Shown: in pieces, positions 30,471 through 52,614 of the stretch
How the letters are laid out: every line of letters starts with the position of its first letter
Numbering within the stretch: position 1 is the first letter of the stretch
The notes under the pieces: model-generated
Database searches by the model: none
What the model was told of the DNA's origin: nothing
What the model saw: the letters and a program-made list of their open reading frames with translations, nothing else
Source: Podarcis erhardii
Lineage: Eukaryota
Length of the DNA stretch: 64,000 nucleotides
Direction: 5' to 3' (one strand)
NCBI GenBank assembly: GCA_964252035.1
Contig: OZ176208.1
Program-made: the position numbers and the translations under genes

Positions 30471-30695
30471 NNNNNNNNNNNNNNNNNNNNNNNNNNNNNN
30501 NNNNNNNNNNNNNNNNNNNNNNNNNNNNNNNNNNNNNNNNNNNNNNNNNNNNNNNNNNNNNNNNNNNNNNNNNNNNNNNNNNNNNNNNNNNNNNNNNNNN
30601 NNNNNNNNNNNNNNNNNNNNNNNNNNNNNNNNNNNNNNNNNNNNNNNNNNNNNNNNNNNNNNNNNNNNNNNNNNNNNNNNNNNNNNNNNNNNNNN
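30471..30695. other. Assembly gap (225 N)
   Basis: Run of N. Confidence 1.
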
Positions 30696-38830: not shown

Positions 38831-41800
38831 AATGATGCTCTGATGCTACTGTTATGTTGTTACTCTTCCCACAACTATTATGTCCATTCCTTTACAAAGT
38901 ACCGTATGTAAAACAACACTTCTTTCTTACCCATATAAGCAATTGACTGTTCCTGGTAGTGATGTCCTTTCTATAGACCACTTGGAAAGATTGCAGTGGT
39001 AATTTCCTAGATTTATGGAGAAACAATTTGACAAAGTCTGGAAATGTGGTAAACCCATTGCTACTTTTCAGCAGTAAACCCATAATATTCAATTGGGGGG
39101 GATTAATTCAGGGGCTGAGCATCATATTGGAAGAAAAATTATTCTACACTGCAGCTGTCACTATTTTTCCACATATATAAAAGAAAGAATACATAATAAA
39201 AATCACCATAAAGAGAAGCTCATAACTTTTGTGAAGTTGCCCTCTGAGATCTGTGCCTCTTGCATATCACCAAATAACAGCTGTCCCTTTGAACATATTG
39301 ACAACATACTAAACAATACTAAATCCTCCTTTTTCAATGAAATCCTCACTCATGAAGTACTTATCATGTTTAAGCTTGATACAAGTATAGTGCATTTGTC
39401 ACATTTCTCTTATGGCTAAGAGAAACACAGTGATATTTTTCTCCTCAGAAAATCTGCACCCACTCTGCTTATGGATAAAAGGATAGGCATACCCCCCCCC
39501 CCAAAGAAAAATCCATTAACCATTTAAGAATTCAGAAATATGTCCCTATTGCTTTCTAGTTCTGTCATTCTTCCTCTTTTCAGTTCAGTTTTCCACAGTT
39601 GAACATAAATTTGTGCACATTCCCTCCATTGAAGAAAATACCTTTTGCTCTCTCTCATGCGCGCGCGCGCGCACACACACACACACACAACCTTTAGAAA
39701 GACACCTAGAGGACTCTAGGACCCTATCAGAGCCCTCACAACTTCTTCCCCAAACCTGGCACTGCACACTTAGCTCCATTAATTTCAATGAGTCTCATCT
39801 GAGTATGACTTAGTTTGATCATCAACCAGTGTCAAGGGCACTTCCCAGTCAAGGAATGCATACAGCAGATAGCTAAGTATTTATTGTCATAGATAACACA
39901 GTCACTTCTACATCTCTGGATATCTACACACACCAATCTAACAGCTAGGCAGCTATTCCCAGTTCTGCACTCTATGGAGCAGCTGCAGCAACAGTAGGCA
40001 ACTCCCCTCCATCAGTTTATGTACCTCCCCCCTTAAGTCTGCATTCTCAGTGCATCCATTTTCAATTCCCACCTGGTTATGGGAGACAGCGGTGCAGGAT
40101 AGGGTGAGTAAGTACCTGGCCTAACCTGCCTCTTCCTCTTCTTCTCCTGACCCAACCTGCGCTCCACCTTCCATCTCCAAAGTTTCCCCTGTCTCTGATT
40201 CTTGCCTCCTGGCTGGTACAGGTCTCCACAAACCACTGCCCACTTTCCATGAGTTAGACTCCAGTCCCCCCTGCCCCCAGGGCACACTTGTCAGCCGCCT
40301 GCCATTCCTGACACCCACTGACAAATGCAAAAGTTTCCAAATCATCTAACAAAATGAAACATTTTACAGAGGGGGAGGAGACCCACCCATCCCCAACCAA
40401 GGGACAATTGAAGTTGGGAGGGAAAGATTCTTCCCAACCCTGTTATCCAGTGACCCAAGTAGCCCCATGAGGCTCTAATACTGAGGGTGGGTGAGAAGAT
40501 CATGGGGTAAAATGGTCCTGAAATGTAGTGTGAGGTCTTTTAAGATCTTGACATTTCTTACTCTCTTGTGAGATCCCATGTGATGATCCCCTTCCCATGG
40601 GATCTCATAAGAAAACAGCAGGGATAGAAAACCCTCCTCTCCTCCTTATGACATTGCACCTTTCAAGAAATACCATATTTCCTAATCCATTCAGATATTG
40701 TGATCAAGAAATATCACAGGAGTCCATTTTTATCAGTAAGAAACACAATAATGACTGGTTTATGTATGAGAGAGACAAAAGCATTCAAGAAGCTGTTCAA
40801 ATGTAGCAAAGATTCACAACACAGAGTATTTCTTTGTGAGTACGGCTTCAACATACAAAGAGTAATGTGATGGGAGCAGGAAAAGATTTACAGCCTATGG
40901 GCATATTATTATTTTTAATGTTCTTGATACCTTGGAACCTCACTATGGTAATTGAGTCGTCAGCATCATCATATTGGAAATGAATGCTTTTTTTAAAAAA
41001 AATGCCAGGTTTTATAAGGGTACAAGGCACTGTGGCTGGTTGTTTGTGTTGCTTACAATGAGTCTGAAAGGTAAATGCTTTGACACATTTGTAAACTAGC
41101 AATTATGGCACATACCCAACAATTTGAAATATTTCTGAATTGTTCAGTGCATCCCCAAACTGCACACCTAATGAAAGGACACAAGAATGTTATTACCATT
41201 GCTTCTACTTGTCTACCATTTCCCACTGGAGAACTTTTGTCAGCTTAACATATTTGTGTTTGTTTTCAGCTCTTTATTTATTTGGTTTTGGTCCTGGAAT
41301 GGAAATCAGCTTAATGATACCTCTTCTTATCATACACACACTTGTGCAATTGAGGAAGACTTGATTAGTCATGCTGCTGCATGATCCCAGGGTTAGAACA
41401 AGATTCACTGAAAATCCACCCTCCCCAAGAACGCAGGACTGCATTATTCAGTTCTTGAAACTAGCATCCCTGCCACCACTGTCACTGTTTTTAACACACA
41501 GTTGAATCTATACCTTAGGCTATTTTATTTTTTTATTTTTTGGCAGGTAAAGATGAGAAACCATCAATTTATGCAGAAGGCCAAGATGAATATTTTCCCT
41601 CTAGGAGTTATGGAACTTTGAGGCTTAGGGAATTGGCAATGGGATGTGGCAGCTCTCACTTAGCAGGGACCCAGATGAGTGCGTTAGGTACAGATATTGT
41701 GACTATAAACCTTAGCATGATATAATAGTCTGCAGAGAACAAAGAAAAACAATGGTCTTTATTTTCAAGTGTCTAGCATTTTCAATGGGTTATTATTCCC

Positions 41801-42088
41801 TTTATGTACTCCCCTTCAAGGCACTGTGTAAAACCCCAGTTGAACCATTTGATTGGAAAAGAATGCTGGAATGGGGGGGGGAGGATTGTTGTAAGAAGAT
41901 GGGAAATATCAGAAAAGCAGATGAATTATTTTTATTAGGGAAGGTGGTATTGGACCATTTTAGATGGTGGTTCATTTTTAATCATTAAATTGTATTAATT
42001 CTAATTCACATATCTATAATTGTTGCAATCCTCTTGACTGGATGATTGGAAGGTCACCAATTGAAAACCATTTACCGAAAGAGTCCAG

Positions 42089-42307
42089 AATGCCACTACC
42101 GAGCTCAGGAGGGGGTGGGGTTGCGGGCTCCCGACCACGCCCACACGCCTGCGAGGCTGGCGTCAGCCTCGCGGGAAGCAGGGATTCCCTCGTTTCTTCC
42201 CCGCGCGCCAGCTAATCGGCTGGCGGCAGGGGCGGGCCTTTCAGAGGCCACTTAAGGTCAGGGCAGCCCTTGGCTCGCCCCTTTCCTACCTTGCAGCTGC
42301 GCGATTT
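42089..42307 (+). repeat. Split direct repeat A1 (5' terminus)
   Basis: 219 bp, AATGCCACTACC...GCTGCGCGATTT, repeated at 48984-49202; GC/CpG-rich. Confidence 0.95.
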
Positions 42308-42393
42308 GGATCACTTGGATCGTCCTCCTGGCGCTGCTGCTTTCTTTCGCTTCCTGGTTCTAGCGACTCGCTGCTTGCTCAGGATCAACTGTG

Positions 42394-42555
42394 CCTCCTT
42401 AGGTTTACACCCCCACCGTCCCCGGAGTCTGAGCGCCGGCAGCGCGCGCGGTCCATGAGCCGCCAAGTCCACGTACCTCCTTAGGCTTACACCCCCACCG
42501 TCCCCGGAGTCTGAGCGCCGGCAGCGCGCGCGGTCTGCGAGCCGCCAAGTCCACG
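42394..42555 (+). repeat. 82-bp tandem duplication in the DIRS 5' leader
   Basis: CCTCCTTAGG(T/C)TTACACCCCCACCGTCCCCGGAG... starts at 42394 and again at 42476. Confidence 0.9.
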
Positions 42556-43008
42556 CTTCTCCCCCCTTTTGCGTCGCCTGCTCGCCGCTTTAGCGGGCGA
42601 GCCTCCTGGGAAAAAACTACACTCCATGGAGGGCTTCGCAAGGATTGTCGGTTAGCAAGCCGCATCAGCGCTCGCTGGAGGTTTCTAGCCGGGAACGGGG
42701 GAGCTGCGGGGGCGCTTTGGGGGGGTGTACGGGTGCGGGGTTAGAGGCACTGGGGGTTTTCTTTTCCGTTTTCTTACCTTTAGTTCTGCTGCTGTACTTT
42801 GTTCTGCTGCCATTTGTTCTGTGTTGCATTTGTCTCATCGGCCACTCCGCATCGCTTAGCTAAGGTTCGGAGCTACTTGGGGGCAACCTCACCGCCTTTA
42901 CTGGCTTGGAGGCAACCTCAGCGGCCTACCTAAACTTCAGTGGTTCGTGGGGTTGTTCTCAGCAGCATTTTGCTTCAGCGTCCAGGTTGCCTGGACAACG
43001 GCTGGGGC

Positions 43009-43082
43009 CGGCTGCCATCTTAAGTTTTCCACGTGGCTTCTGCGGTGGCCATTTTGGGTGGCTTCTGCGGCGGCCATTTTGG
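43009..43082 (+). promoter_or_regulatory. Cluster of YY1-like motifs (GCCATCTT, GGCCATTTTG x2 in a 25-bp tandem repeat) in the DIRS leader
   Basis: The motifs resemble the YY1 consensus CCGCCATNTT; motif match only. Confidence 0.35.
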
Positions 43083-43923
43083 GTGAGACAAATTTGGTAG
43101 AAGGGCTCTGAGATCAGCCTATTCTTTCAGTACTTCGCCTGGGGGGCTTATTTGGGCCTCGGTGGATACTTTCTGTGGTTTTACCCCGAAATAGATTACT
43201 TTAATTCCTTCATTTCCGTTTATTACTTTTTAGCCTTTGCAAACTTTCTAGTTTCTTTCTCCTTTAACACCCCCCCCCCCCCGTTTCTTCGCTAACCTTT
43301 GGCTGGATAATTGTTACTCTTTTGGCCAAAATTCTTAATTTGCCATTACAGTTTATTCGGGCATTTGTTTCCCTCCCTCGCTAACTACCAGTGCTGGTTG
43401 GCAATTTTATTTCTCCTTAGCAAGTCCTGGGATTTGTTGCCTTTCAGTCAGCAGCCGGCTAAATCTTATATTTTGGCCTTTTCTATTCTAATTATCCTTT
43501 CAGTGTCTACTCCTTGCTAGCTTGTTCTGCAATTAGGCGTGGTATTTACGCTCCAGTGGGCAGTTATTTACTTCTATAAGCAGATAGGCTGACAACTATT
43601 AATAGCCTGACTGTTAATACTTCTTCCTTGCTTATTAAATAATATATATATATATTTATACCAATAAATAAATAAATAAATAAATACAATAAAAAAATAA
43701 TAATAATTAAAAAACACAATAATAATAAATAAATTAATTAATTAAAAAAAAATTCTTCTTCTATACTTGAACACAACTTCATAGGCCAAGTAGATAAGCA
43801 AGACCCTGCCAAGTTGGAACAGTCTGCTTGAAGTACCTTTTAGATTTTGATCAATAGCTGGTAATACGTCAGACTGATCTAGCGCTCCGTGCCAATTTCC
43901 TGCTTTCTCCTTTCTGCTTTATT

Positions 43924-45408
43924 ATGGAGGGCAACGGTAATTCCCAAGCACCTCAGCCTGGTAATGTTCTGGTGCCAACGGGCCCTTGCAATCCTCAGGC
44001 CCTGGCTCAGCTATTTTCCGCTCTTCAATCCTTTTACACCCAGTGCAGGGCACCCATCACTCCCTCTCTGAACATTGTGGAAGTGACTCAAGATTGCATC
44101 CCGGATACCCCCTCCAGTCAGCAGGGTCAGGAGGGGCCCTCCACCAGCGCAGCTTCCATGGTCCAGCAGGCCCCCAGCAGGCCTCGGACACGTCTGCAAA
44201 CGGCGCGTGCTCAAAAGTCTAAGTCAGGTCCACAGAAGGGTAAGGTGCCTGCTCAAAAGCCTAGGGCCAATACACAGAAGCCTAGACCATCGGTGGCCTC
44301 CCCTGCGGTCCCTCGACAGGAGGTAATAGACGTCCCTAGTGTTTTTCAGGACAACCCAGGGCAGCAGAGTTCCTCGGAGGGGTCAACATCGGATGAGGAG
44401 ATACTCCCACAGCAGGCCATCAATGACCCTGCCCCGGGCGACGGTGTCCCACGGGGTGGAAAACGGAAGTCGAAGAAGAAGCATCGGTTGAAGAAGAACA
44501 AGAGGAGAGACACTTCTGACTCTGAGGAGGAGACAGGTACTTCTTCTTCTGAAGGGGATAGTGATGCTCCTATGGAGACATACTGGGGAGAAGGGGAGGA
44601 CACGGGAGCCCCACTGTGGATCCATGAAAGGAGGGCCAATTCACACAGAAAAGCCTTTAATGGCACTCTTGACTGGAAGGATGGTGCTTTGGTCCAAGAC
44701 ATTAAAGTCTCAACCAACTCCGCCACTGACTTTATTCTGGGGAATCACCTCTCTAAGAAGAAGAGGAATAAGATATTAAATGGTGATTACGTTGATATGT
44801 TTTCGTTGCTACCCCCAGCTCAAGTTAAGGGAAAAGGGGAGAAAAGAAGGTATTACGGTAAAAAGAGGTACAGGGCTCCTGGGGTTGAGCGAACTTTTGA
44901 GAATTGGCTTAATGGGTATCAAGTTTTTATGGCAGTAGTGTCCAGTTGTTATCCCAAACGGGGCATGCACCTCGCGTCTTACCTGGCGCACGTCAGGCGG
45001 GCGCGGGAATTAGCGGGCGATGAGGCCGCCTTGGCGTATGATGAGGAATTTCGGAGGAACGCCTCGCTGCTGTCCTCTACGCGATGGGACCAAAAGGACA
45101 ACAACTGCTGGATGGAACATGTGGGGCCGAACATCGAAAAGAAATCCACTGAGCAGCCAAAATCTGGTAAGGTGGAGACGCAACGCCGTAGACAGTGCTG
45201 GGACTTCAACAAGGGTACCTGTCAGCGCGTAGCCTGTAAGTACTTGCACGAATGTGATAAGTGCTTAGGCAGCCACCCAGCAATCAACTGTTACAAAGGG
45301 AAGCAGCAGCCCTTTCGCGGAGGCAGGGGTCACCTCACCCGGGGTAATCGAGGTGCCCCCGTGGGACCCGCTGGTCCCGCCCAAGGGCCGTCTGGGTCCC
45401 GATACTAA
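43924..45408 (+). CDS. Gag-like ORF1 of the DIRS/Ngaro element (494 aa)
   Basis: ATG in strong Kozak context (ATTATGG). Low-complexity N-terminus, basic NLS-like run (KRKSKKKHRLKKNKRR), typical DIRS Gag core (HLSKKKRNKILNGDYVDMFSLL; YDEEFRR; RWD). C-terminal C-x7-C-x4-C-x3-H plus C-x2-C-x3-H-x4-C zinc fingers. Confidence 0.9.
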   Translation: MEGNGNSQAPQPGNVLVPTGPCNPQALAQLFSALQSFYTQCRAPITPSLNIVEVTQDCIPDTPSSQQGQEGPSTSAASMVQQAPSRPRTRLQTARAQKSKSGPQKGKVPAQKPRANTQKPRPSVASPAVPRQEVIDVPSVFQDNPGQQSSSEGSTSDEEILPQQAINDPAPGDGVPRGGKRKSKKKHRLKKNKRRDTSDSEEETGTSSSEGDSDAPMETYWGEGEDTGAPLWIHERRANSHRKAFNGTLDWKDGALVQDIKVSTNSATDFILGNHLSKKKRNKILNGDYVDMFSLLPPAQVKGKGEKRRYYGKKRYRAPGVERTFENWLNGYQVFMAVVSSCYPKRGMHLASYLAHVRRARELAGDEAALAYDEEFRRNASLLSSTRWDQKDNNCWMEHVGPNIEKKSTEQPKSGKVETQRRRQCWDFNKGTCQRVACKYLHECDKCLGSHPAINCYKGKQQPFRGGRGHLTRGNRGAPVGPAGPAQGPSGSRY

Positions 45409-47017
45409 CGTTTCCCTCAGCTTGGCGTACTCCCCGATAAAATTACAGCCCCTGAGAGCACTGTTGAAGCTTTATCCAAATAGACAAGCGGCCTGCCTCT
45501 TAGAGGAAGGGTTTTCCCAGGGTTTTAGAATCCCGGTCACCTTCACCCCCAACGCAAGTTGTCCCCCTAACCAGACGTCTGTGCTAGAAAGACCCGACAT
45601 TGCCACAAAAAAGATCCAAAAAGAGATTGCCGCCGGGAGGGTGGCCGGGCCCTTCACTTTCCCCCCCATTGAGGGTTTGCATATTTCTCCCCTTGGTATT
45701 GTCCCTAAGAAGGCCCCCGGGGAATTTCGTATGATACATAACTTGTCTTACCCCAAGGGAGCCTCGGCCAATGACGCCATCCCCCAGGAAATGTGCACAG
45801 TGAAGTATGCCTCCTTCGATCAAGCTGTGCGGTTGGTAAGGAGTTTTGGTAGGGGCGCCTTTATGGCAAAATGCGACATTGAGTCGGCATTTCGCCTTCT
45901 TCCGGTCCACCCAGATGACTATCGTTGGTTGGGTTTCAAGTTCCAGGGAGCCTTCTTCATCGATAAAGCTATGCCTATGGGATGTTCGATTGCCTGCGCT
46001 GCGTTTGAGACCTTTAGCACATTTCTGGAATGGGCCTTAAAGTTTAGAACTGGTTCCGAAGGGGTGGGGCACTATCTGGATGATTTTATTTTGGTGGCGA
46101 GGAACGCTGGTGAGTGCAGGACCTTGCTTCTAGCTTTTGAATCCCTAGCCAGTGAACTGGGGGTCCCTTTGGCAAGTGAGAAGACAGAGGGCCCGGTCAC
46201 GACCATGACGTACCTGGGTATCGAACTGGACACTTTGGCCCAAACTTCTCGCTTACCAGCTGAGAAGTTGGTTGCCTTAAAAGAACTTATTGGCCAAATG
46301 CTGCCTTTAAAGAAGGTCACCCTGAGACAAATTCAATCCCTTCTGGGGCACCTCAACTTTGCCTGCCGTGTGGTTTCCCCCGGCCGCCCCTTTTGTGGCC
46401 GTCTAGCTAAGCTGTCTGTGGGTTTACGGTCTCCACATCATAGGGTTCGCCTATCCAAGGCGGTAAAGTCCGACCTCCAAGTTTGGTTGCAATTCCTAGA
46501 TGGTTTTAACGGCATATCTTTGTGGCAGGATACCTTGGTCCTGCAGTCGGATTTTCAGGTACATTCGGATGCAGCTGGATCCTTAGGTTTCGGTGTGTAC
46601 TTCAGGGGGCAATGGTGCGCCCAGCGTTGGCCTCCCTCTTGGCAAGGAAAACCAATACTGCGTGATTTGACATTCCTGGAATTCTTCCCTATTGTAGTCG
46701 CAATCCACATTTGGGAGGAGCAGTTAAAAAACCATAGGGTTTGTTTCTGGACGGACAACCAAGCGGTTGTCTCAGTTCTGAATAAACAATCTTCACATTC
46801 TCCTAGAGTTGCTTCGCTTTTGCGGTATTTCGTCCTTTCATGCCTGCGGTTGAACCTTCACGCTTCCGCCAAATTCGTTCCCGGTATAGACAATAACATT
46901 GCGGATGCTTTATCTCGTTTCCAGATGGAACGCTTTCGCTCATTGGCGCCGGATGCGCAGCAGCAGCCGCAACCGTTTCCGGAGCACCTCTGGAGTATTG
47001 GCAACGAGAAGCAATAA
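45353..47017 (+). CDS. Reverse transcriptase / RNase H of the DIRS/Ngaro element (554 aa, uninterrupted)
   Basis: RT motifs: ISPLGIVPKK, FRMIHNLS, KCDIESAFRLLPV, MPMGCS, HYLDDF, YLGIELD. RNase H motifs: SDAAGS, LEFFPI, WTDNQ, NNIADALSR. The frame is open from 45269 (+1 relative to gag); the first ATG is only at 45731. Confidence 0.97.
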   Translation: MPPWDPLVPPKGRLGPDTNVSLSLAYSPIKLQPLRALLKLYPNRQAACLLEEGFSQGFRIPVTFTPNASCPPNQTSVLERPDIATKKIQKEIAAGRVAGPFTFPPIEGLHISPLGIVPKKAPGEFRMIHNLSYPKGASANDAIPQEMCTVKYASFDQAVRLVRSFGRGAFMAKCDIESAFRLLPVHPDDYRWLGFKFQGAFFIDKAMPMGCSIACAAFETFSTFLEWALKFRTGSEGVGHYLDDFILVARNAGECRTLLLAFESLASELGVPLASEKTEGPVTTMTYLGIELDTLAQTSRLPAEKLVALKELIGQMLPLKKVTLRQIQSLLGHLNFACRVVSPGRPFCGRLAKLSVGLRSPHHRVRLSKAVKSDLQVWLQFLDGFNGISLWQDTLVLQSDFQVHSDAAGSLGFGVYFRGQWCAQRWPPSWQGKPILRDLTFLEFFPIVVAIHIWEEQLKNHRVCFWTDNQAVVSVLNKQSSHSPRVASLLRYFVLSCLRLNLHASAKFVPGIDNNIADALSRFQMERFRSLAPDAQQQPQPFPEHLWSIGNEKQ

Positions 47018-47025
47018 AGGGAGTA

Positions 47026-47898
47026 TTGTCCGCACTGGCTCCTTCTACTCTCAAATCTTATAATAAGGCATGGCTAGACTTTACATCTTTCCACAGGAAG
47101 AAGGAGTGGTTTAGGCCTGGTAGGCCGCCGTCTAAGTCGGAAGTCATAGAGTATATGGTTCGCCTTCGAGATCTAGGTCGGGCTCCCAAAACCCTCAATA
47201 TCCATTCGGCGGCGATATCCTTCTTTTCTAAAGCCTTATTCTCCGTCGATCCCTGCTCACATTTTGTTGTCCGGAAAATGCTGGAGGGCTGGCGCAGGGC
47301 CAGACCTCAGGGCCAAGACGGTAGAAGGCCCATAACGCTGGACATACTTACCCAAATCCGCAGAAAGCTTAGGGTCCTTTGTTGGTCAAGGTATGAGGCC
47401 AGATTATTCTCTGCTGCATTTTCCTTTGCATTCTTTGGGGCTTTGCGCATTGGTGAGGTGGTCTGCGTAGACCGTGCAGCCAATAGGGGCCTATTGTTGG
47501 AGGATGTAACGGTAGCCAGCTCGCACGTCATACTAAAAATCCGCAGTTCCAAGACCGACCAGCTGGGCAGGGGAGCCTTTATCCACCTCCAGGCGACCCA
47601 GAAGGCTGGCCCTTGCCCAGTAAAAGACGCTAAGAAATATCTGTGTGTAAGACCGAAATCTAATGGCCCCTTTTTCTTGCATTCCGATGGGTCCTTTCTC
47701 TCTAAACATCAGTTCACGAGGGTCATGCGCAAAGCGATCGCGGCCATTGGTCTGCCGCAAGAGGAGTATGCTGCACACTCCTTTCGCATTGGGCCGGCGA
47801 CCACCGCCGTTCATATGGGTTTACCGGCTGAAAGGATTATGGACATGGGGCGTTGGAAATCCAACGCATACAAGGGTTACATTCGGAAGCCTTTTTAA
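47026..47898 (+). CDS. Tyrosine recombinase (phage-integrase family) of the DIRS/Ngaro element
   Basis: Catalytic motifs FFGALRIGE (R), SKTDQ (K), HSFR (H-x-x-R), GRWKS (W) and YKGYIR (Y), plus an N-terminal LAPSTLKSY core-binding region. The frame is open from 46897 and overlaps the RNase H end; the first ATG is at 47155. Confidence 0.96.
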   Translation: MSALAPSTLKSYNKAWLDFTSFHRKKEWFRPGRPPSKSEVIEYMVRLRDLGRAPKTLNIHSAAISFFSKALFSVDPCSHFVVRKMLEGWRRARPQGQDGRRPITLDILTQIRRKLRVLCWSRYEARLFSAAFSFAFFGALRIGEVVCVDRAANRGLLLEDVTVASSHVILKIRSSKTDQLGRGAFIHLQATQKAGPCPVKDAKKYLCVRPKSNGPFFLHSDGSFLSKHQFTRVMRKAIAAIGLPQEEYAAHSFRIGPATTAVHMGLPAERIMDMGRWKSNAYKGYIRKPF

Positions 47899-47973
47899 TT
47901 TCCTGTCACTCTTTTCTCTTCTACTCACCAAGGGCATCCCTCCTGACCCGGCTTTCTTATTCTATCCTTCCAG

Positions 47974-48558
47974 GTGCTGTTTTGGTGCGACTGTGGATTA
48001 TCGGTCACAGTATCGTTCATTGGGCTAAACGTCGAGCAGAGCGCAGGCGACGGGATGCTGACCTCCTACTACCTAACAATGTTAAAGTGTCATGGGTTAC
48101 TAGGCGTGGTATGCGTTGGGAAGAATTCTTCCCAGCCATATCCAGAAGAATTGCGGAAGAAGGTTCGCCTGACGCCTTGATCATACAACTGGGCGAGAAC
48201 GATCTGGCTTATAGGAAAGGGGTAGACTTAATGTGGAACATTATCAATGACTTGGAACCGTTGAGGGCGTCCCACTCTAATATTACAATAATTTGGTCAT
48301 CCTTGCTGGAAAGGCGAGTTTGGCGGGATGCAGCGTAACCCGCAGCGGTGGATAAAGCCAGAAGGATTGTGGAGCGCACCGTGGCGCGTAGGGTGGCCGC
48401 GCTGGGCGGACTGGTCATCAAACACCCGGAAATTCAATATAACGATACACTCTATCGCTGGGATGGCGTACATCTATCTGATGCTGGCAATGATATCTGG
48501 TTGGCTGATATTTGGAATTTGGCTGATATTTGGAATTAGGGATTGGTTACAGGTCTGA
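47974..48558 (+). pseudogene. SGNH/GDSL-type hydrolase (esterase) ORF of the element, disrupted
   Basis: Blocks WIIGHS (Ser), RGMRW (Gly), IQLGENDL (Asn) and DGVHLS (His) lie in one frame. In-frame TAA at 48336-48338. An 18-bp tandem duplication (48501-48536) leads to TAG at 48537, and a shifted frame continues as RDWLQV. Confidence 0.88.
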
Positions 48559-48594
48559 GGGTATTGGCGGCGAGCCGGCGTAACGCGGCTCGAG

Positions 48595-48985
48595 TGGCGG
48601 TAGGCATTGGCCGGGGTATTGTCATGCAAATGAGATCGGGGGGGAGGAGCGCCATCACCTCCCCCAATGCTTGAAGGGTAGTTCGTTAAAGGACTCCGAG
48701 GGGCGACGCCTCGTCCGAAACCTACAGAGGCTAGGGCCTAAAGCGTGCCCCCAAGCGGTAACCCCTCGGGGAGCGCCTAGGGATATGCATCTCGGGTAGC
48801 TCCCCCTGTTGGTGTTTAACCCTTCCTGGTTAGACCGGATAGTTGGTTAGGGGCCAATGCCTAAAGCCAATACCTCTCTTACCTGTAATCAATAAAGTTG
48901 TGGCCATTTTCGCCCATTAACCTAAATACTTGTGTCCAGTGTCTTTATTCATTCCACCTGTGGGGGGGAGGGTATAGCCACGCAA
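48595..48985 (+). repeat. Split direct repeat B1, containing AATAAA at 48891-48896
   Basis: About 390 bp, repeated at 49366-49755 with about a dozen differences, mostly transitions. Confidence 0.95.
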
Positions 48986-49202
48986 TGCCACTACCAAGCT
49001 CAGGAGGGGGTGGGGTTGCGGGCTCCCGACCACGCCCACACGCCCGCGAGGCTGGCGTCAGCCTCGCGGGAAGCAGGGATTCCCTCGTTTCTTCCCCGCG
49101 CGCCAGCCAATTGGCTGGCAGCAGGGGCAGGCCTTTCAGAGGCCACTTAAGGTCGGGGCAGCCCTTGGCTCGCCCCTTTCCTACCTTGCAGCTGCGCGAT
49201 TT
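48984..49202 (+). repeat. Split direct repeat A2
   Basis: Copy of 42089-42307; shares the AA dinucleotide with the end of B1. Confidence 0.95.
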
Positions 49203-49365
49203 CCCACCCACCCACCCTTTAGGTTTGCCATCGACTTTGCTATGGGCTTCGGCTGGTCGCCGCTTGGGGCCAGGTAGGAATTTTTTCCATTTGGCTAAGT
49301 GGCTGGTTCGGAGCCATTTGGTTTTTTGCCTACCTCTTAGCAATTCGTCACAACTTCCTCGGTTA

Positions 49366-49755
49366 TGGTGGTAGGCATTGGCCGGGGTATTGTCATGCAA
49401 ATGAGATCGGGGGGAGGAGCGCCATCACCTCCCCCAATGCTTGAAGGGTAGTTCGTTAAAGGACTCCGAGGGGTGACGCCTCGTCCGAAACCTACGGAGG
49501 CTAGGGCCTAAAGCACGCCCCCGAACGGTAACCCCTTGGGGAGCGCCTAGGGATATGCATCTCGGGTAGCTCCCCCTGTTGGTGTTTAACCCTTCCCGGT
49601 TAGACCGGATAGTCGGTTAGGGGCCAATGCCTAAAGCCAATACCTCTCTTACCTGTAATCAATAAAGTTGTGGCCATTTTCGCCCATTAACCTAAATACT
49701 TGTGTCCAGTGTCTTTATTCATTCCACCTGTGAGGGGGAGGGTATAGCCACGCAA
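49366..49755 (+). repeat. Split direct repeat B2 (3' terminus), AATAAA at 49661-49666
   Basis: Copy of B1, ending GGTATAGCCACGCAA. Confidence 0.95.
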
Positions 49756-52614
49756 AAACAAGTCCATCAGCTTACCTATGTTCTATATATAAATACGTAT
49801 ATAAACATATCCCCATTGTTTCTATCTAATAGAGAAGAATAACAACATAGCAGTTTGGAATAGCTATCATCAAAAGGAGGTAGTTATCTGCTCAAATTGA
49901 TTGCAATTTCTTGAGCATAGGATGTTCTGAATTATTTATTTTGTGTGCAGATTACCACATAGTTTGGATCCTACCATGATTTTGCTTATTCCCTGTCTGA
50001 AGGATTCAGTTGGCCTTATATGTGAGCAGTCATGTAGGATTCCATAAACACACAAACAAAATCAAGATTTAAAACATGTAGTTCTACACAGTCTACACAA
50101 ACTGACATACAGCAGCAGCAGCCAGAACAATGGGAACTCCCAATATTTGAAGAAAGGTAAGCCAGCCTAGCTTCTCTAATTATCTTTCTATTTCATTGGT
50201 TCTTCTGCAATTCTAACAGAATACTGATTATCATAAGTGAATTTCACCATTGACAGAGACCTTTTACCAGAAAGACAAGATTGACACAAGCAATTGAAAG
50301 CCAGCTAATGAAAAAAGCCAAATGTACTTTTTACGAATGTTAAGTTTGTGGATTACTGCCCAAGCCCTGGCACCACTCAACAAGTGTCCTGATTTTCCAG
50401 GGACAGACCCATAATTATGAAAGCAATCCTGGCTTCTGATTTGATCTCAGAATGGCCTTATTTCCCCTGCTAGTACTGCCGCTGCCAAGCTCGGGGCGGA
50501 GGAGAAGGCAGCGTTTGTCTCGAGCGACAGCAGTGGTGGTGGCAGTGGCGAGAGAGCATCCCATTGCCTCTCCATGGTCTTGCCATGGCCACTGCTGCTG
50601 GCATCCTCCCTTGGGCAGCTTGTAGTTGCTGCTGGGGATCAGACAAAGAGGAGAAGTGGCTGTTGCCATTGAGGCCCATTCCCATGTGACGATTGGCTCT
50701 GAGGGGCAAGCAGAAAGCAGGCCCCCGTCTGGGTGGGAAGAAAGAAGAAGCGGAGTGGAGTACACCAAGCAGCCTTGGGTTTTTTAATGCTTGGTAAATT
50801 TCTGAAATTGCTTTCGAGTGCATTTTTCTTTTTATAACTCTACCAAAGGGGGGGGGAGGATTGGATTAAGGGGTTTTCTCAGCACAGTGGAGGGCGTATG
50901 TGCTGTGCTTCATTGGTATCATGGTGATAGCACTCACCTTTCTTTTGATAGGAAATGGTCTTTGAGGGAAGACAACAAAGAAATGGGAGGTGAAGGAGGG
51001 TCAGTTGGTGGGGAGTGTGTGAGAGACTAGTGTGTGTGTGTGTGCGCACACACACACACATGCTAATATATATATAGAAAAATGTGATACAAAAAAGTAA
51101 ACATTAGTTAAATCTACAAAATCAGACTTCAATTTGAATGTCTGCAGAAATAAAAATGTATTCACTGGTGCCAGAAGTTCAACAGGGTGGGGGGCCTGTC
51201 TGATCTCAGTTGGAAGAGAGTTCTGTAATTAAAGCTGGTATAGAAATAATAATGATGATGATGATGATGATGATGATGTTTATTAAATTTGTATCACCTT
51301 TCATCCATAGATCTCAGGGTGATTCACAAATAATAATAAAATTGGACCCACAATACTGAATGTATGACTGGTGGATACGAACCATGCATCAGAGCCATTG
51401 GGGACCACTACCAGTCTTTCTCCCCAAAAACACAGTGGTCAGGTATCTCATGAGTCTCCTTCACCTGAACTGCAATGTAAGCCAAGACACACACCAAATT
51501 TTCCAAGGTTAAATAGAAAAAGATGATATCAGAAAGGTTGGTTTGATTTTGTATATGCTTTATTTCTCATGGTTAATAGTTATAGAAAACTAAAACCGGA
51601 AACTGATATGATAGAATTTCTGGTTGAGCTGGACTTAGCAAGTATTTTATTATTATATTCAATAGGTCGACAGTCATGATTGATGGTGGATTTTCATTTA
51701 TTTATGCTTAATTTAGTTCTGTTTGCCATCACATTTGTTATATAAAGTTCATCTCCCTCTTATATATTGTGATGACCTATTGTAAGCAATGCATTTGAAC
51801 TGAAATCTCAAAGTGAGCAACTAAAACATACCAAATCACAGTAAAAAGAGGTAAAAATCATGTCCCCCTCTCTTATACATAACATTTTTGAAATGTGGTA
51901 CACAACATATTCTAGGCAAAAACTGAGCACCTTTTAAGCCTCATGGATGGCAGTTGAATGCTTAAGACACCCACTAAAATCAATGGGAATTATCCATGCT
52001 TCAGTTTAGCTAGATTATTTAATAAATATGATAAGCACTGAATATTCAATCTATGTCTGTCCTAAATGATATTGATTAAGTGAATCTTCATCTCTGACAG
52101 AAGTTGACAGAATTTTTCTTTCAGGTGATTTGGATGTGCTCTCGTTCTTGCCAGGACATCATTAACTATAAGGTGACTACAGGATTAAATCCCTCATCAT
52201 TTTCATTCTTCAGTACTCTTCAAGATGTGTATTCCTCAAACATAATTGAGTGCTGTTTAGATGATAGGAGAATTTCAAAGATTTCTTTAGTCAGAGGGTG
52301 ATGTCTCTTCTCATTATTCAGCCTTACTAAAAAGGCCAAGCTGATAAGGATGCCTTTGAAGACAGACTAGTTTATTAAGTGTCTACTATCTCTTTTTAAA
52401 TCATATCCTACACGATAGCTTCAATTATTTACTATACAGCAGTGGTAAAAAAGTGTTAATTAGAAAAGATTAAAAAGCTCCACTCTAGGGGAGCTCCTGT
52501 ATAGACACTTCCATTTCCAATGGCTGAAGTGACCAGCTAATTTGCAGTTTCTAATAGACTGAATACATGATGTACAGAATATATATATATGCTTTCGTAG
52601 ATTTCCAAAACCTG

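What the first reader, a model, noticed from the sequence alone, without database searches (positions are those of the whole stretch)
42089..49755. Near-intact four-ORF tyrosine-recombinase retrotransposon (Ngaro-like) with an SGNH esterase cargo
Seen: A1-[gag, RT/RH, YR, SGNH]-B1-A2-spacer-B2 architecture; gag, RT/RH and YR are uninterrupted; A1/A2 and B1/B2 differ by only about 3%, and 6 of 7 A differences are at CpGs. Established: Ngaro elements have this split-repeat layout and some vertebrate ones encode a hydrolase, but the hydrolase's role is unknown. Inference: this is a recently active lizard family whose intact siblings could be used to study the complete system (RT, RNase H, YR, esterase).
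Basis: partly seen in the sequence, partly recalled or inferred. Interest (0 to 1): 0.8.

Follow-up and report, generated by a model that had tools for sequence, protein, structure and literature searches.

The report
Decaying Ngaro retrotransposon with spliced esterase
This is a real, full-length but already damaged copy of a known kind of lizard jumping gene (a Ngaro-type tyrosine-recombinase retrotransposon carrying an esterase gene), ordinary in kind, though its conserved splice signals suggest how the esterase and the recombinase are made.

Summary
Window 42089-49755 (+) is one full-length tyrosine-recombinase retrotransposon laid out A1-[gag, RT/RNase H, YR, SGNH esterase]-B1-A2-spacer-B2. 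A1/A2 match at 212 of 219 bases, and 6 of the 7 differences are CpG transitions.

It meets every structural Ngaro criterion I could test. I could not run an RT tree against DIRS1/PAT references.

It is not a new kind. The same four-ORF Ngaro-like elements are described in Xenopus, and relatives are common in lacertids, anoles, geckos and amphibians.

This copy is dead or dying:
- The esterase ORF has an in-frame stop and a frame-disrupting 13-nt length change near its 3' end.
- The repeats have diverged about 3%, suggesting insertion a few million years ago.
- The nearest siblings I could reach (Podarcis muralis) are only 81% identical in DNA, although those copies are themselves young.

One added finding: a splice donor in gag and two acceptors, before YR and before the esterase, are conserved and frame-compatible here. 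Public gene models in Podarcis, Zootoca, Anolis and Xenopus use these same sites. This suggests YR and the esterase are made as fusions to a gag N-terminal leader from spliced RNAs.

Consensus building was left out and referred.

The parts
42089..42307 (+). A1 repeat (promoter-like: CCAAT-type box, GC box, TTAAG about 45 nt before its end; 10-nt-stem palindrome near 42149-42174)
   Evidence: 212/219 identical to A2. Motif blocks are conserved with P. muralis A repeats. CpG o/e is 0.77 against 0.09-0.20 in the flanks. By comparison with the outgroup, the CCAAT position carries one of the three A1-specific substitutions.
42308..43923 (+). long 5' leader with an 82-nt tandem duplication (42391-42554), a 25-nt x2 repeat (43033-43085) and an AT-rich microsatellite (about 43640-43755)
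   Evidence: Relatives have leaders of similar length, 1.5-1.7 kb (A1 ends, gag starts), but not alignable to this one. No Rfam family or tRNA was found.
43924..45408 (+). gag-like ORF, 494 aa, intact; basic NLS-like stretch 44455-44508; CCCH/CCHC-type zinc knuckles 45196-45291
   Evidence: dN/dS against the P. muralis relative is 0.06-0.10.
44536..44537 (+). predicted splice donor (CAG|GTAC) inside gag; exon 1 = 43924-44536 (204 codons + 1 nt)
   Evidence: The homologous CAG|GT site is conserved in L001, L002, L004 and L006, and in L005's gene model. It is used by the public gene models P0266, P0265 and P0123; the models at the Anolis sagrei locus L007 use a donor at the same relative place in gag.
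45269..47017 (+). RT/RNase H ORF, intact (YLDD 46073-46084; RNase H DAAGS 46568, TDNQAV 46751, ADALSR 46901-46918); overlaps gag by 137 nt in the +1 frame; no methyltransferase domain
   Evidence: Pfam RVT_1 E=7e-13. 89-90% aa identity to P. muralis proteins. Motif coordinates. The ORF ends 32 codons after the last RNase H motif and YR follows at once.
46924..46925 (+). predicted splice acceptor for YR (TTTCCAG|ATGGA), inside the RNase H 'SRFQME' codons; phase-compatible with the donor
   Evidence: Conserved in L001, L002, L004, L005 and L006. It is the acceptor of gene model P0123 in L006 and of P0183 in Anolis sagrei L007.
46925..47898 (+). tyrosine recombinase ORF, uninterrupted, no ATG near its start; catalytic R (47440-47457 ALRIGE), H-x-x-R (47776-47793), W (47848-), Y (47875-47886 GYIR)
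   Evidence: Weak end-to-end alignment with Cre places the query's R, H-x-x-R, W and Y under the Cre motifs that I recall as R173, H289, R292, W315 and Y324; the numbering is from memory. 196 homologues. dN/dS 0.06.
47973..47974 (+). predicted splice acceptor for the esterase (pyrimidine tract + CAG|GT), 76 nt after the YR stop; phase-compatible with the donor
   Evidence: L001 has TTTCAG|GT at the homologous place. Gene models P0266 and P0265 and the 357-aa L007 model use acceptors at the same relative place, a few codons before the conserved esterase start. Protein conservation between families starts only here.
47974..48539 (+). SGNH esterase coding region, broken: blocks I GHS 48003-48017, II RRGMRW 48102-48119, III GENDL 48192-48206, V DGVH 48462-48476; in-frame stop 48336-48338; 18-nt tandem duplication 48501-48537 with a net +13 nt
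   Evidence: The intact relative P0241 models as an SGNH fold (pLDDT 88.5; Foldseek prob 1.0 to TesA, PAF-AH and sialate esterases). dN/dS 0.18.
48595..48983 (+). B1 repeat, with AATAAA at 48891-48896; abuts A2
48984..49202 (+). A2 repeat
49203..49365 (+). unique spacer between A2 and B2 (roughly 165-180 nt in the P. muralis and Xenopus relatives too)
49366..49755 (+). B2 repeat, with AATAAA at 49661-49666. The element ends ...CACGC-AA, and the AA dinucleotide is shared with the start of A1 (crossover dinucleotide, no target-site duplication)
   Evidence: The same two-base sharing is seen in L001 and L005 (AA) and in Xenopus L003 (TG).

Best explanation
The region is one insertion of a Ngaro-type retrotransposon of the DIRS order in a lacertid lizard genome. 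It is now methylated and decaying.

Shown:
- The split direct repeats, with B1 abutting A2.
- Four co-oriented, overlapping reading frames: gag, RT/RNase H, tyrosine recombinase, SGNH esterase.
- Catalytic motifs of RT, RNase H, YR and esterase are all present.
- There is no methyltransferase domain, no inverted repeats and no target-site duplication. A single AA dinucleotide is shared by the two ends.

Inferred life cycle:
- A behaves as the promoter part and B as the polyadenylation part of a split LTR.
- The RNA lacks the ends. The internal B1-A2 junction supplies the template that restores them.
- The recombinase joins the B|A junction of the cDNA to a genomic AA without duplicating the target.

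Inferred expression:
- Full-length RNA gives gag and, by an unknown +1-frame mechanism, RT/RNase H.
- A donor at 44536|44537 spliced to acceptors at 46925 or 47974 gives two fusion proteins. Each carries the first 204 gag residues, including a basic NLS-like stretch, joined to YR or to the esterase.
- This would explain why neither ORF has its own ATG here.
- The esterase is kept by selection in the lineage and probably serves the particle, as the esterase domain of CR1/L2 LINE ORF1 proteins is thought to. Its substrate is unknown.

This copy: the esterase is interrupted twice and one promoter motif of A1 is changed, so it is very unlikely to be autonomous.
For: - Layout and repeat identity.
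- ORFs and frames.
- Domains and motifs.
- Same layout with 99-100% identical repeats in P. muralis (L001, L004, L005) and X. tropicalis (L003).
- Xenopus elements of this layout are called Ngaro-like in PMC9210276.
- Two-base sharing at the ends in 4 independent insertions.
- Purifying selection on all ORFs (dN/dS 0.05-0.18 with dS about 1-1.4).
- Splice model, two-exon models: P0266/L004 and P0265/L005 have canonical GT..AG introns that remove the rest of gag, RT and YR.
- Splice model, P. muralis: P0123/L006 joins the gag leader to YR.
- Splice model, Anolis sagrei: L007 has two models sharing exon 1, one ending in YR and one in the esterase.
- Splice model, Zootoca: LOC118082278 isoform X1 is RT and X2/X3 is leader + esterase.
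- Splice model, X. tropicalis: P0269/P0400 are leader + esterase.
- Splice model, window: all three window sites are canonical and phase-compatible. The donor and the YR acceptor are conserved at homologous positions in every relative the alignments reached, and the esterase acceptor aligned in L001 only.
- Host-exon + esterase chimeric models, for example VGLL4 + SGNH, suggest the acceptor works in vivo.
- SGNH fold and best solved sequence relative, the ZfL2-1 LINE ORF1p esterase 4c1b (E=1.6e-4).
- Decay.
Against: - No RT/RNase H tree with DIRS1, PAT or VIPER references could be built. The Ngaro call rests on structure and on the nearest amphibian relatives.
- The splice model rests on public gene predictions, whose transcript support I could not inspect, and on site conservation. 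No RNA reads were examined.
- The YR acceptor lies in conserved RNase H codons, so its conservation is partly explained by coding constraint.
- Some gene models instead fuse YR directly to the esterase (P0163, P0164, P0268). One relative (L001) has an ATG at the YR start. Internal initiation or reinitiation is therefore not excluded.
- The link to LINE esterases is weak (24 bits). The fold search returned only generic SGNH enzymes.
- The replication scheme is inferred from the layout. DIRS-1 has been shown to use linear single-stranded cDNA (PMC7192593), so a circular intermediate is not certain.
Confidence: 0.8

Rival explanations
1. The element is a DIRS1-like or PAT-like element rather than Ngaro.
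For: All three groups share RT/RNase H plus a tyrosine recombinase. PAT-like and VIPER-like elements also have split direct repeats (PMC6681497). I could not run the RT tree.
Against: No inverted terminal repeats or internal complementary region. No room for a methyltransferase domain between RNase H and YR. A hydrolase ORF is present, which the literature assigns to Ngaro. The nearest amphibian relatives are the four-ORF SGNH elements called Ngaro-like.
Confidence: 0.04
2. YR and the esterase are translated from the unspliced RNA (frameshifting, reinitiation or internal initiation), and the spliced gene models are annotation artefacts.
For: The ORFs overlap by 64-137 nt, as in frameshifting retroelements. 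L001 has an ATG at the YR start. Some models read YR into the esterase. I could not inspect transcript support for the models.
Against: Canonical, phase-compatible sites recur across lineages whose synonymous sites are saturated, and in frogs. The same shared first exon is modelled in at least 5 species by different pipelines (NCBI, Xenbase v10, a P. lilfordi annotation). The region just upstream of the esterase acceptor is not conserved as protein.
Confidence: 0.2
3. This particular copy is young and still active, possibly polymorphic in the population.
For: gag, RT/RNase H and YR are open. CpG o/e is still 0.6-0.8 against 0.1-0.2 in the flanks. Related lineages in P. muralis have 99-100% identical repeats.
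Against: 18 substitutions in 607 nt of repeats. The esterase has a stop and a frame-disrupting length change. One A1 promoter motif is changed. No near-identical sibling was found among about 5.8 billion protein clusters; the best are 90% for RT, 86% over part and 82% over most of YR, and about 70% for the esterase.
Confidence: 0.05
4. The esterase ORF is a captured host fragment or an unrelated nested insertion, not part of the element.
For: Pfam support in the window copy alone is weak (E=0.085). Large host-like proteins with tandem SGNH domains exist in a gecko.
Against: The same position, downstream of YR and upstream of B1, is seen in every full-length relative examined, from lizards to Xenopus. 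dN/dS is 0.18. Catalytic blocks are conserved.
Confidence: 0.02

Closest known systems
[quoted passage not shown]
   Same: A1...B1-A2-B2 split direct repeats. Four overlapping ORFs: gag, RT/RNase H, YR, SGNH hydrolase. No methyltransferase. A Xenopus copy I fetched (L003) shows the same spacer, two-base end sharing and spliced leader + esterase gene models.
   Different: Only about 48% RT identity. Different repeat lengths. Lizard host. The Xenopus gene model has an extra small exon from the YR start. I could not compare with the Repbase consensus sequences themselves.
Ngaro-like elements of Podarcis muralis (loci L001, L002, L004, L005, L006; annotated only as 'uncharacterized protein' or 'integrase/recombinase xerD homolog')
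   Same: Same layout, same end sequence (...CACGC-AA-TGCC in L001), and the same splice sites. The window's RT nests in a 100/100-supported clade with P0001, P0002 and P0010.
   Different: 81% DNA identity at best, with dS above 1. The 5' leaders are not alignable. Those copies have 99-100% identical repeats, whereas this one has about 97%.
DIRS1-like and PAT-like elements
   Same: RT/RNase H of the same broad type plus a tyrosine recombinase. No target-site duplication; insertion at a short identical sequence (3 bp in DIRS1-like, PMC3266345).
   Different: DIRS1-like elements have inverted terminal repeats, an internal complementary region and a methyltransferase domain. PAT-like elements also have the methyltransferase domain. 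None of these is present here.
Esterase-type ORF1 proteins of CR1/L2 LINEs (ZfL2-1 ORF1p, PDB 4c1b; PMC3905857)
   Same: A small SGNH esterase carried by a retrotransposon. 4c1b is the best-scoring solved structure by sequence (E=1.6e-4). In the splice model the esterase sits behind a helical, self-association-type leader, as in ORF1p. The catalytic Ser/Gly/Asn/Asp-His blocks are kept.
   Different: An unrelated element class. The similarity is weak. Block I reads GHS rather than GDS. No biochemical data exist for the Ngaro protein.
Subgenomic splicing of retroviruses and some LTR retrotransposons
   Same: One donor near the 5' end of gag and alternative acceptors upstream of downstream genes.
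   Different: Here the products would be in-frame fusions to a 204-residue gag leader. Not shown experimentally.

Membership tests
Ngaro (DIRS order) | Split direct repeats: A1 at the 5' end and B1-A2-B2 at the 3' end, with A1=A2 and B1=B2 | tested here: met
   A 212/219 and B about 96.5% identical. B1 abuts A2. A 163-nt spacer lies before B2.
Ngaro (DIRS order) | ORF order gag - RT/RNase H - tyrosine recombinase, co-oriented | tested here: met
Ngaro (DIRS order) | No methyltransferase domain (present in DIRS1-like and PAT-like) | tested here: met
   The RNase H ADALSR motif is at 46901-46918, the ORF stop at 47015, and the YR frame is open from 46897. Pfam finds nothing else.
Ngaro (DIRS order) | RT/RNase H groups with Ngaro references, apart from DIRS1/PAT/VIPER | not testable with these tools
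   No named DIRS1, PAT, VIPER or Ngaro reference sequence was reachable by reference. The tree holds only Ngaro-like tetrapod sequences. Indirect support: the nearest amphibian relatives are four-ORF SGNH elements.
Ngaro (DIRS order) | Insertion by recombination, without target-site duplication | tested here: met
   There is no duplication. A single AA is shared by the B2 end and the A1 start, as in L001 and L005, and as TG in Xenopus L003.
Ngaro (DIRS order) | Optional extra hydrolase (SGNH) ORF after YR in vertebrate members | tested here: met
   Blocks I, II, III and V are present, but the ORF is interrupted in this copy.
Tyrosine recombinases | Catalytic R...H-x-x-R...W/H...Y | tested here: met
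   All align with Cre motifs whose catalytic residues I recall as R173, H289, R292, W315 and Y324 (numbering from memory). The alignment itself is weak, E=0.23.
SGNH/GDSL hydrolases | Four conserved blocks with Ser, Gly, Asn and Asp-x-x-His, on a flavodoxin-like fold | tested here: met
   The blocks are conserved across lizard and frog relatives. The model of relative P0241 has pLDDT 88.5 and Foldseek prob 1.0 to many SGNH enzymes. The fold was tested on the relative, not on the broken window ORF.
SGNH/GDSL hydrolases | Esterase activity | not testable with these tools
   Needs an enzyme assay.
DIRS1-like | Inverted terminal repeats plus an internal complementary region | tested here: not met
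   No inverted repeat of 40 nt or more in 41000-51000.
LTR retrotransposons / endogenous retroviruses | Two complete direct LTRs, a DDE integrase and a 4-6 bp target duplication | tested here: not met
   The repeats are split, the integrase is a tyrosine recombinase, and there is no duplication.

The most novel reading that the evidence does not exclude
Tetrapod Ngaro elements may be 'complex' retroelements. A single splice donor inside gag and two alternative acceptors would yield subgenomic mRNAs. Their products would be in-frame fusions of a roughly 200-residue gag leader (helical segment plus basic NLS-like stretch) to the recombinase or to the esterase. The enigmatic Ngaro hydrolase would then be a leader + esterase protein, analogous in architecture to the esterase-type ORF1 proteins of CR1/L2 LINEs. 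Intronic Ngaro copies would act as ready-made exon traps. I found no description of this in the papers I could search.
Probability: 0.5. Interest if true: 0.65.

Novelty: new member of a known kind. Interest (0 to 1): 0.42.

Why it matters
As an element it adds little. Ngaro elements with a hydrolase ORF are known, and this copy is damaged.

Its value is as a clean, full-length example whose conserved splice signals, read with public gene models from lizards and frogs, give a testable answer to two small open questions:
- how the ATG-less YR and hydrolase ORFs of Ngaro are expressed;
- in what protein context the hydrolase acts.

It also explains a class of odd database entries, such as 'xerD homolog', 'mucin-1-like', 'collagen alpha-2(I) isoform X2' and VGLL4 + GDSL. 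These are probably Ngaro products or host-Ngaro chimeras.

For experiments, the young natural P. muralis copies with identical repeats are the useful material, not this one.

Tried and rejected
- Reference sequences for DIRS1/PAT/VIPER. I looked for a DIRS1-like element through lower-scoring YR hits. P0186 and P0263 were not on record. P0183 turned out to be another Ngaro. Pfam on distant YR hits showed no methyltransferase-type partner. I gave up on the RT tree against other DIRS-order groups.
- The Xenopus paper's supplement, wanted to tie L003 to DIRS-53/54_XT, is not held. Goodwin & Poulter 2004 is not held.
- Literature searches for Ngaro in lizards or squamates, and for Ngaro splicing, gave nothing specific.
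- Rfam and tRNA scans of the element and window found no primer-like RNA gene or SINE.
- No other copy or fragment of the element lies in the window.
- The PDB sequence search with RT/RNase H gave no hit at E<=0.001.
- The fold search placed the esterase only among generic SGNH enzymes, so no substrate could be inferred.
- I first read the absence of an ATG at the YR start as a lesion. I rejected that once the spliced models explained it.
- A possible 11-13 nt imperfect flanking repeat (GTCCA motifs) was considered as a target duplication. I rejected it as too imperfect for a copy of this age.
Full report
**1. Observation**

The region 42089-49755 on the + strand contains two pairs of direct repeats.
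- A1 (42089-42307) and A2 (48984-49202) match at 212 of 219 positions.
- B1 (48595-48983) and B2 (49366-49755) are 96.4-96.9% identical, with 11 substitutions and 3 indel positions.
In B, 9 of 11 do.
- B1 runs straight into A2. A unique 163-nt spacer separates A2 from B2.
- No inverted repeats of 40 nt or more exist, and no second copy lies in the window.

Stop-to-stop frames:
- gag: 43858-45405, with its ATG at 43924.
- RT/RNase H: 45269-47014, in the +1 frame, with a 137-nt overlap.
- Tyrosine recombinase: 46897-47895.
- SGNH: 47832-48335. It meets an in-frame stop at 48336-48338 and continues in the same frame to 48536.

A second lesion sits near the 3' end of the esterase. An 18-nt tandem duplication (48501-48537) gives a net +13 nt relative to two relatives, which changes the frame of the last codons.

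So three ORFs are intact and the fourth is broken at least twice.

**2. What it is**

Domains and motifs:
- Pfam gives RVT_1 (E=7e-13). The Phage_integrase, SAM-like and GDSL hits are weak.
- Motifs of RT (YLDD), RNase H (DAAGS, TDNQAV, ADALSR) and the esterase (GHS, RRGMRW, GENDL, DGVH) are present.
- The recombinase aligns end to end, though weakly, with Cre. Its R, H-x-x-R, W and Y fall under the Cre motifs I recall as R173, H289, R292, W315 and Y324 (numbering from memory).
- The RNase H domain ends 32 codons before the ORF stop and the YR frame is already open there. There is no room for the methyltransferase domain of DIRS1-like and PAT-like elements.

Relatives by protein search:
- The RT ORF has more than 1000 homologues. 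The best are Podarcis muralis proteins (89-90% aa), then Zootoca vivipara (74%), geckos, anoles, snakes and amphibians.
- In a maximum-likelihood tree of 33 tetrapod sequences, the window nests in a 100/100-supported clade with three P. muralis proteins. That clade sits inside a lacertid radiation of at least four lineages.
- The host is therefore a lacertid, very likely Podarcis.

Relatives by genomic copy:
- P. muralis copies (L001, L004, L005) and a Xenopus tropicalis copy (L003) show the same layout: A1, long leader, four ORFs, B1-A2, spacer, B2.

Insertion ends:
- In four independent insertions the last two bases after B2 equal the first two of A1. They are AA in the window, L001 and L005, and TG in Xenopus.
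- There is no target-site duplication.
- This is the Ngaro counterpart of the 3-bp identity described for DIRS1-like elements (PMC3266345). It marks the crossover dinucleotide.

**3. Age and state of this copy**

- Using P. muralis A repeats as outgroup, 3 of the 7 A differences arose in A1 and 4 in A2. One A1 change falls in a conserved CCAAT-type box.
- Over 607 nt of repeat there are 18 substitutions (3.0%), but only 3 are outside CpG (0.5%).
- I assumed neutral rates of 0.8-2.4e-9 per site per year; this is my own assumption, not a tool result. Non-CpG sites then give roughly 1-3 million years, and all sites give 6-18 million years.
- CpG observed/expected is still 0.6-0.8 inside the element against 0.09-0.20 in the flanks. 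The element is therefore evolutionarily young but methylated and decaying.
- The nearest siblings reachable are 81% identical in DNA. Synonymous divergence is near saturation (dS 0.9-1.45) and dN/dS is 0.05-0.18 for all four ORFs.
- These siblings are separate, long-lived lineages under purifying selection, the esterase included.
- The P. muralis copies themselves have 99-100% identical repeats. L004 gave single unbroken matches to all four ORFs, though I did not scan its ORFs for stops.
- Lacertid Ngaro lineages are thus recently active. The activity of the window's own subfamily cannot be judged from what I could reach.

**4. How the downstream ORFs are probably expressed**

Neither the YR ORF nor the esterase ORF has an ATG near its start in this copy.

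A profile search with the esterase found 2893 relatives. Most of the best 150 have a non-YR, non-RT N-terminal extension. Several of those extensions match the first half of gag.

Gene models that show the splicing:
- P. muralis P0266 (L004) and P0265 (L005) are two-exon models with canonical GT..AG introns of about 3.4 kb. The intron removes the rest of gag, RT/RNase H and YR, and joins the gag leader in frame to the esterase.
- P. muralis P0123 (L006) joins the same leader to YR.
- Anolis sagrei locus L007 has two models that share exon 1. One ends in YR. For the other, applying the same donor to an acceptor before the esterase gives an open 357-codon frame, exactly the annotated length.
- Zootoca LOC118082278 has isoform X1 = RT and X2/X3 = leader + esterase.
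- X. tropicalis proteins from two annotation pipelines (P0269, P0400) are leader + esterase, with an extra small exon from the YR start.
- A 1677-nt Logan contig (L008) carries a continuous leader + esterase ORF, as a cDNA would. I do not know whether that run is RNA.

Sites in the window:
- Donor CAG|GTAC at 44536|44537.
- YR acceptor TTTCCAG|A at 46924|46925.
- Esterase acceptor, a pyrimidine tract then CAG|G, at 47973|47974.
- All three are present and phase-compatible, 1 nt + 2 nt in each case.
- The donor and the YR acceptor are conserved at homologous positions in every relative the alignments reached, and L005's own donor is known from its gene model. The esterase acceptor aligned in L001 only; the other loci were too diverged there, but L004, L005 and L007 have acceptors at the same relative place in their gene models.
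- Protein conservation of the esterase between families begins only at the acceptor.

Host-exon + esterase chimeras such as VGLL4 + GDSL (P0289) fit an acceptor that works in vivo.

I searched the window's exons separately by reference. I did not build or search a joined exon 1 + exon 2 protein of the window copy. For public loci the join was only checked, inside a script, against the annotated protein.

I found no paper describing natural splicing of Ngaro. The founding paper is not held, so I cannot claim priority for this point.

**5. The esterase**

- An intact relative (P0241, 68% identical to the window's first piece) models confidently (pLDDT 88.5). It matches many SGNH enzymes, including TesA, PAF acetylhydrolase and sialate O-acetylesterases, at probability 1.0 but without a specific nearest family.
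- By sequence, the best solved relative of the family profile is 4c1b, the esterase domain of the zebrafish ZfL2-1 LINE ORF1 protein (E=1.6e-4).
- That paper lists CR1, RTEX and Penelope esterases but not Ngaro.
- In the splice model the Ngaro protein is a leader + esterase, which resembles the coiled-coil + esterase ORF1p. The resemblance is one of architecture; homology beyond the shared superfamily is not shown.

**6. Mechanism (inference)**

- A carries conserved CCAAT-type, GC-box and TTAAG motifs and a 10-nt-stem palindrome. B carries AATAAA about 90 nt before its end.
- If B+A is read as one LTR, the element is half-LTR (A1) - body - full LTR (B1A2) - spacer - half-LTR (B2). The RNA lacks the outer ends, and B1-A2 is the template that restores them.
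- The recombinase would then exchange strands at the AA of the B|A junction with a genomic AA.
- Whether the intermediate is circular is open, because DIRS-1 uses linear single-stranded cDNA (PMC7192593).

**7. Verdict**

The kind is known (new member of a known kind) and the copy is not a candidate active element. The most interesting by-product is the conserved splice architecture.

**8. Constraints observed**

- I took no contig for human.
- The N run at 30471-30695 was left untouched.
- The broken esterase was searched in its two pieces only.

Noticed in passing
P0257, P0258, P0261, P0267 (Sphaerodactylus townsendi and others; found): Very large proteins (1900-3100 aa) with 4-6 tandem SGNH domains closely related to the Ngaro esterase. 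Here block I reads GDS, and there is no similarity to gag, RT or YR. They may be a domesticated or ancestral host gene family, or an annotation of tandem retrocopies.
   Followed up: partly
P0289, P0264, P0275, P0423, P0427, P0432: Public gene models that join host-like N-termini or host names to the Ngaro esterase domain. Examples are VGLL4, 'zinc finger protein 638-like', 'SPRY domain-containing protein 4 isoform X2', 'mucin-1-like' and 'collagen alpha-2(I) isoform X2'. They are likely exon trapping by the esterase acceptor, or misnaming of proline-rich gag leaders.
   Followed up: partly
window 42078-42088 and 49754-49765: The two flanks each contain GTCCA within a loosely similar 11-13 nt stretch (AAAGAGTCCAG / AAACAAGTCCAT). 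It is too imperfect for a target duplication. It may be chance or a target preference.
   Followed up: no
window about 42149-42174 and 49044-49069; also L001 and L002 A repeats: A palindrome with 10-nt arms (CGCGAGGCTG..CAGCCTCGCG) is conserved in the A repeat across subfamilies that are otherwise only about 80% identical. It could be a protein-binding or priming structure.
   Followed up: no
window 42391-42554, 43033-43085, 43640-43755: The 1.6-kb 5' leader holds an 82-nt tandem duplication, a 25-nt x2 repeat and an AT-rich microsatellite. Leaders of related lineages are of similar length but not alignable.
   Followed up: partly
L003 12603-13800 (Xenopus tropicalis): A 31-nt tandem array of more than 30 copies lies close to the 3' end of the Xenopus Ngaro-like element.
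   Followed up: no
L008 (Logan SRR6291285 contig, 1677 nt): A continuous 394-codon ORF with a coiled-coil-like leader directly joined to the esterase, on a contig too short to hold the intron. It is a possible spliced cDNA or a processed retrocopy. The organism and library type are unknown.
   Followed up: partly
window 30471-30695: A run of 225 N (assembly gap or masked stretch). Left as it is.
   Followed up: no
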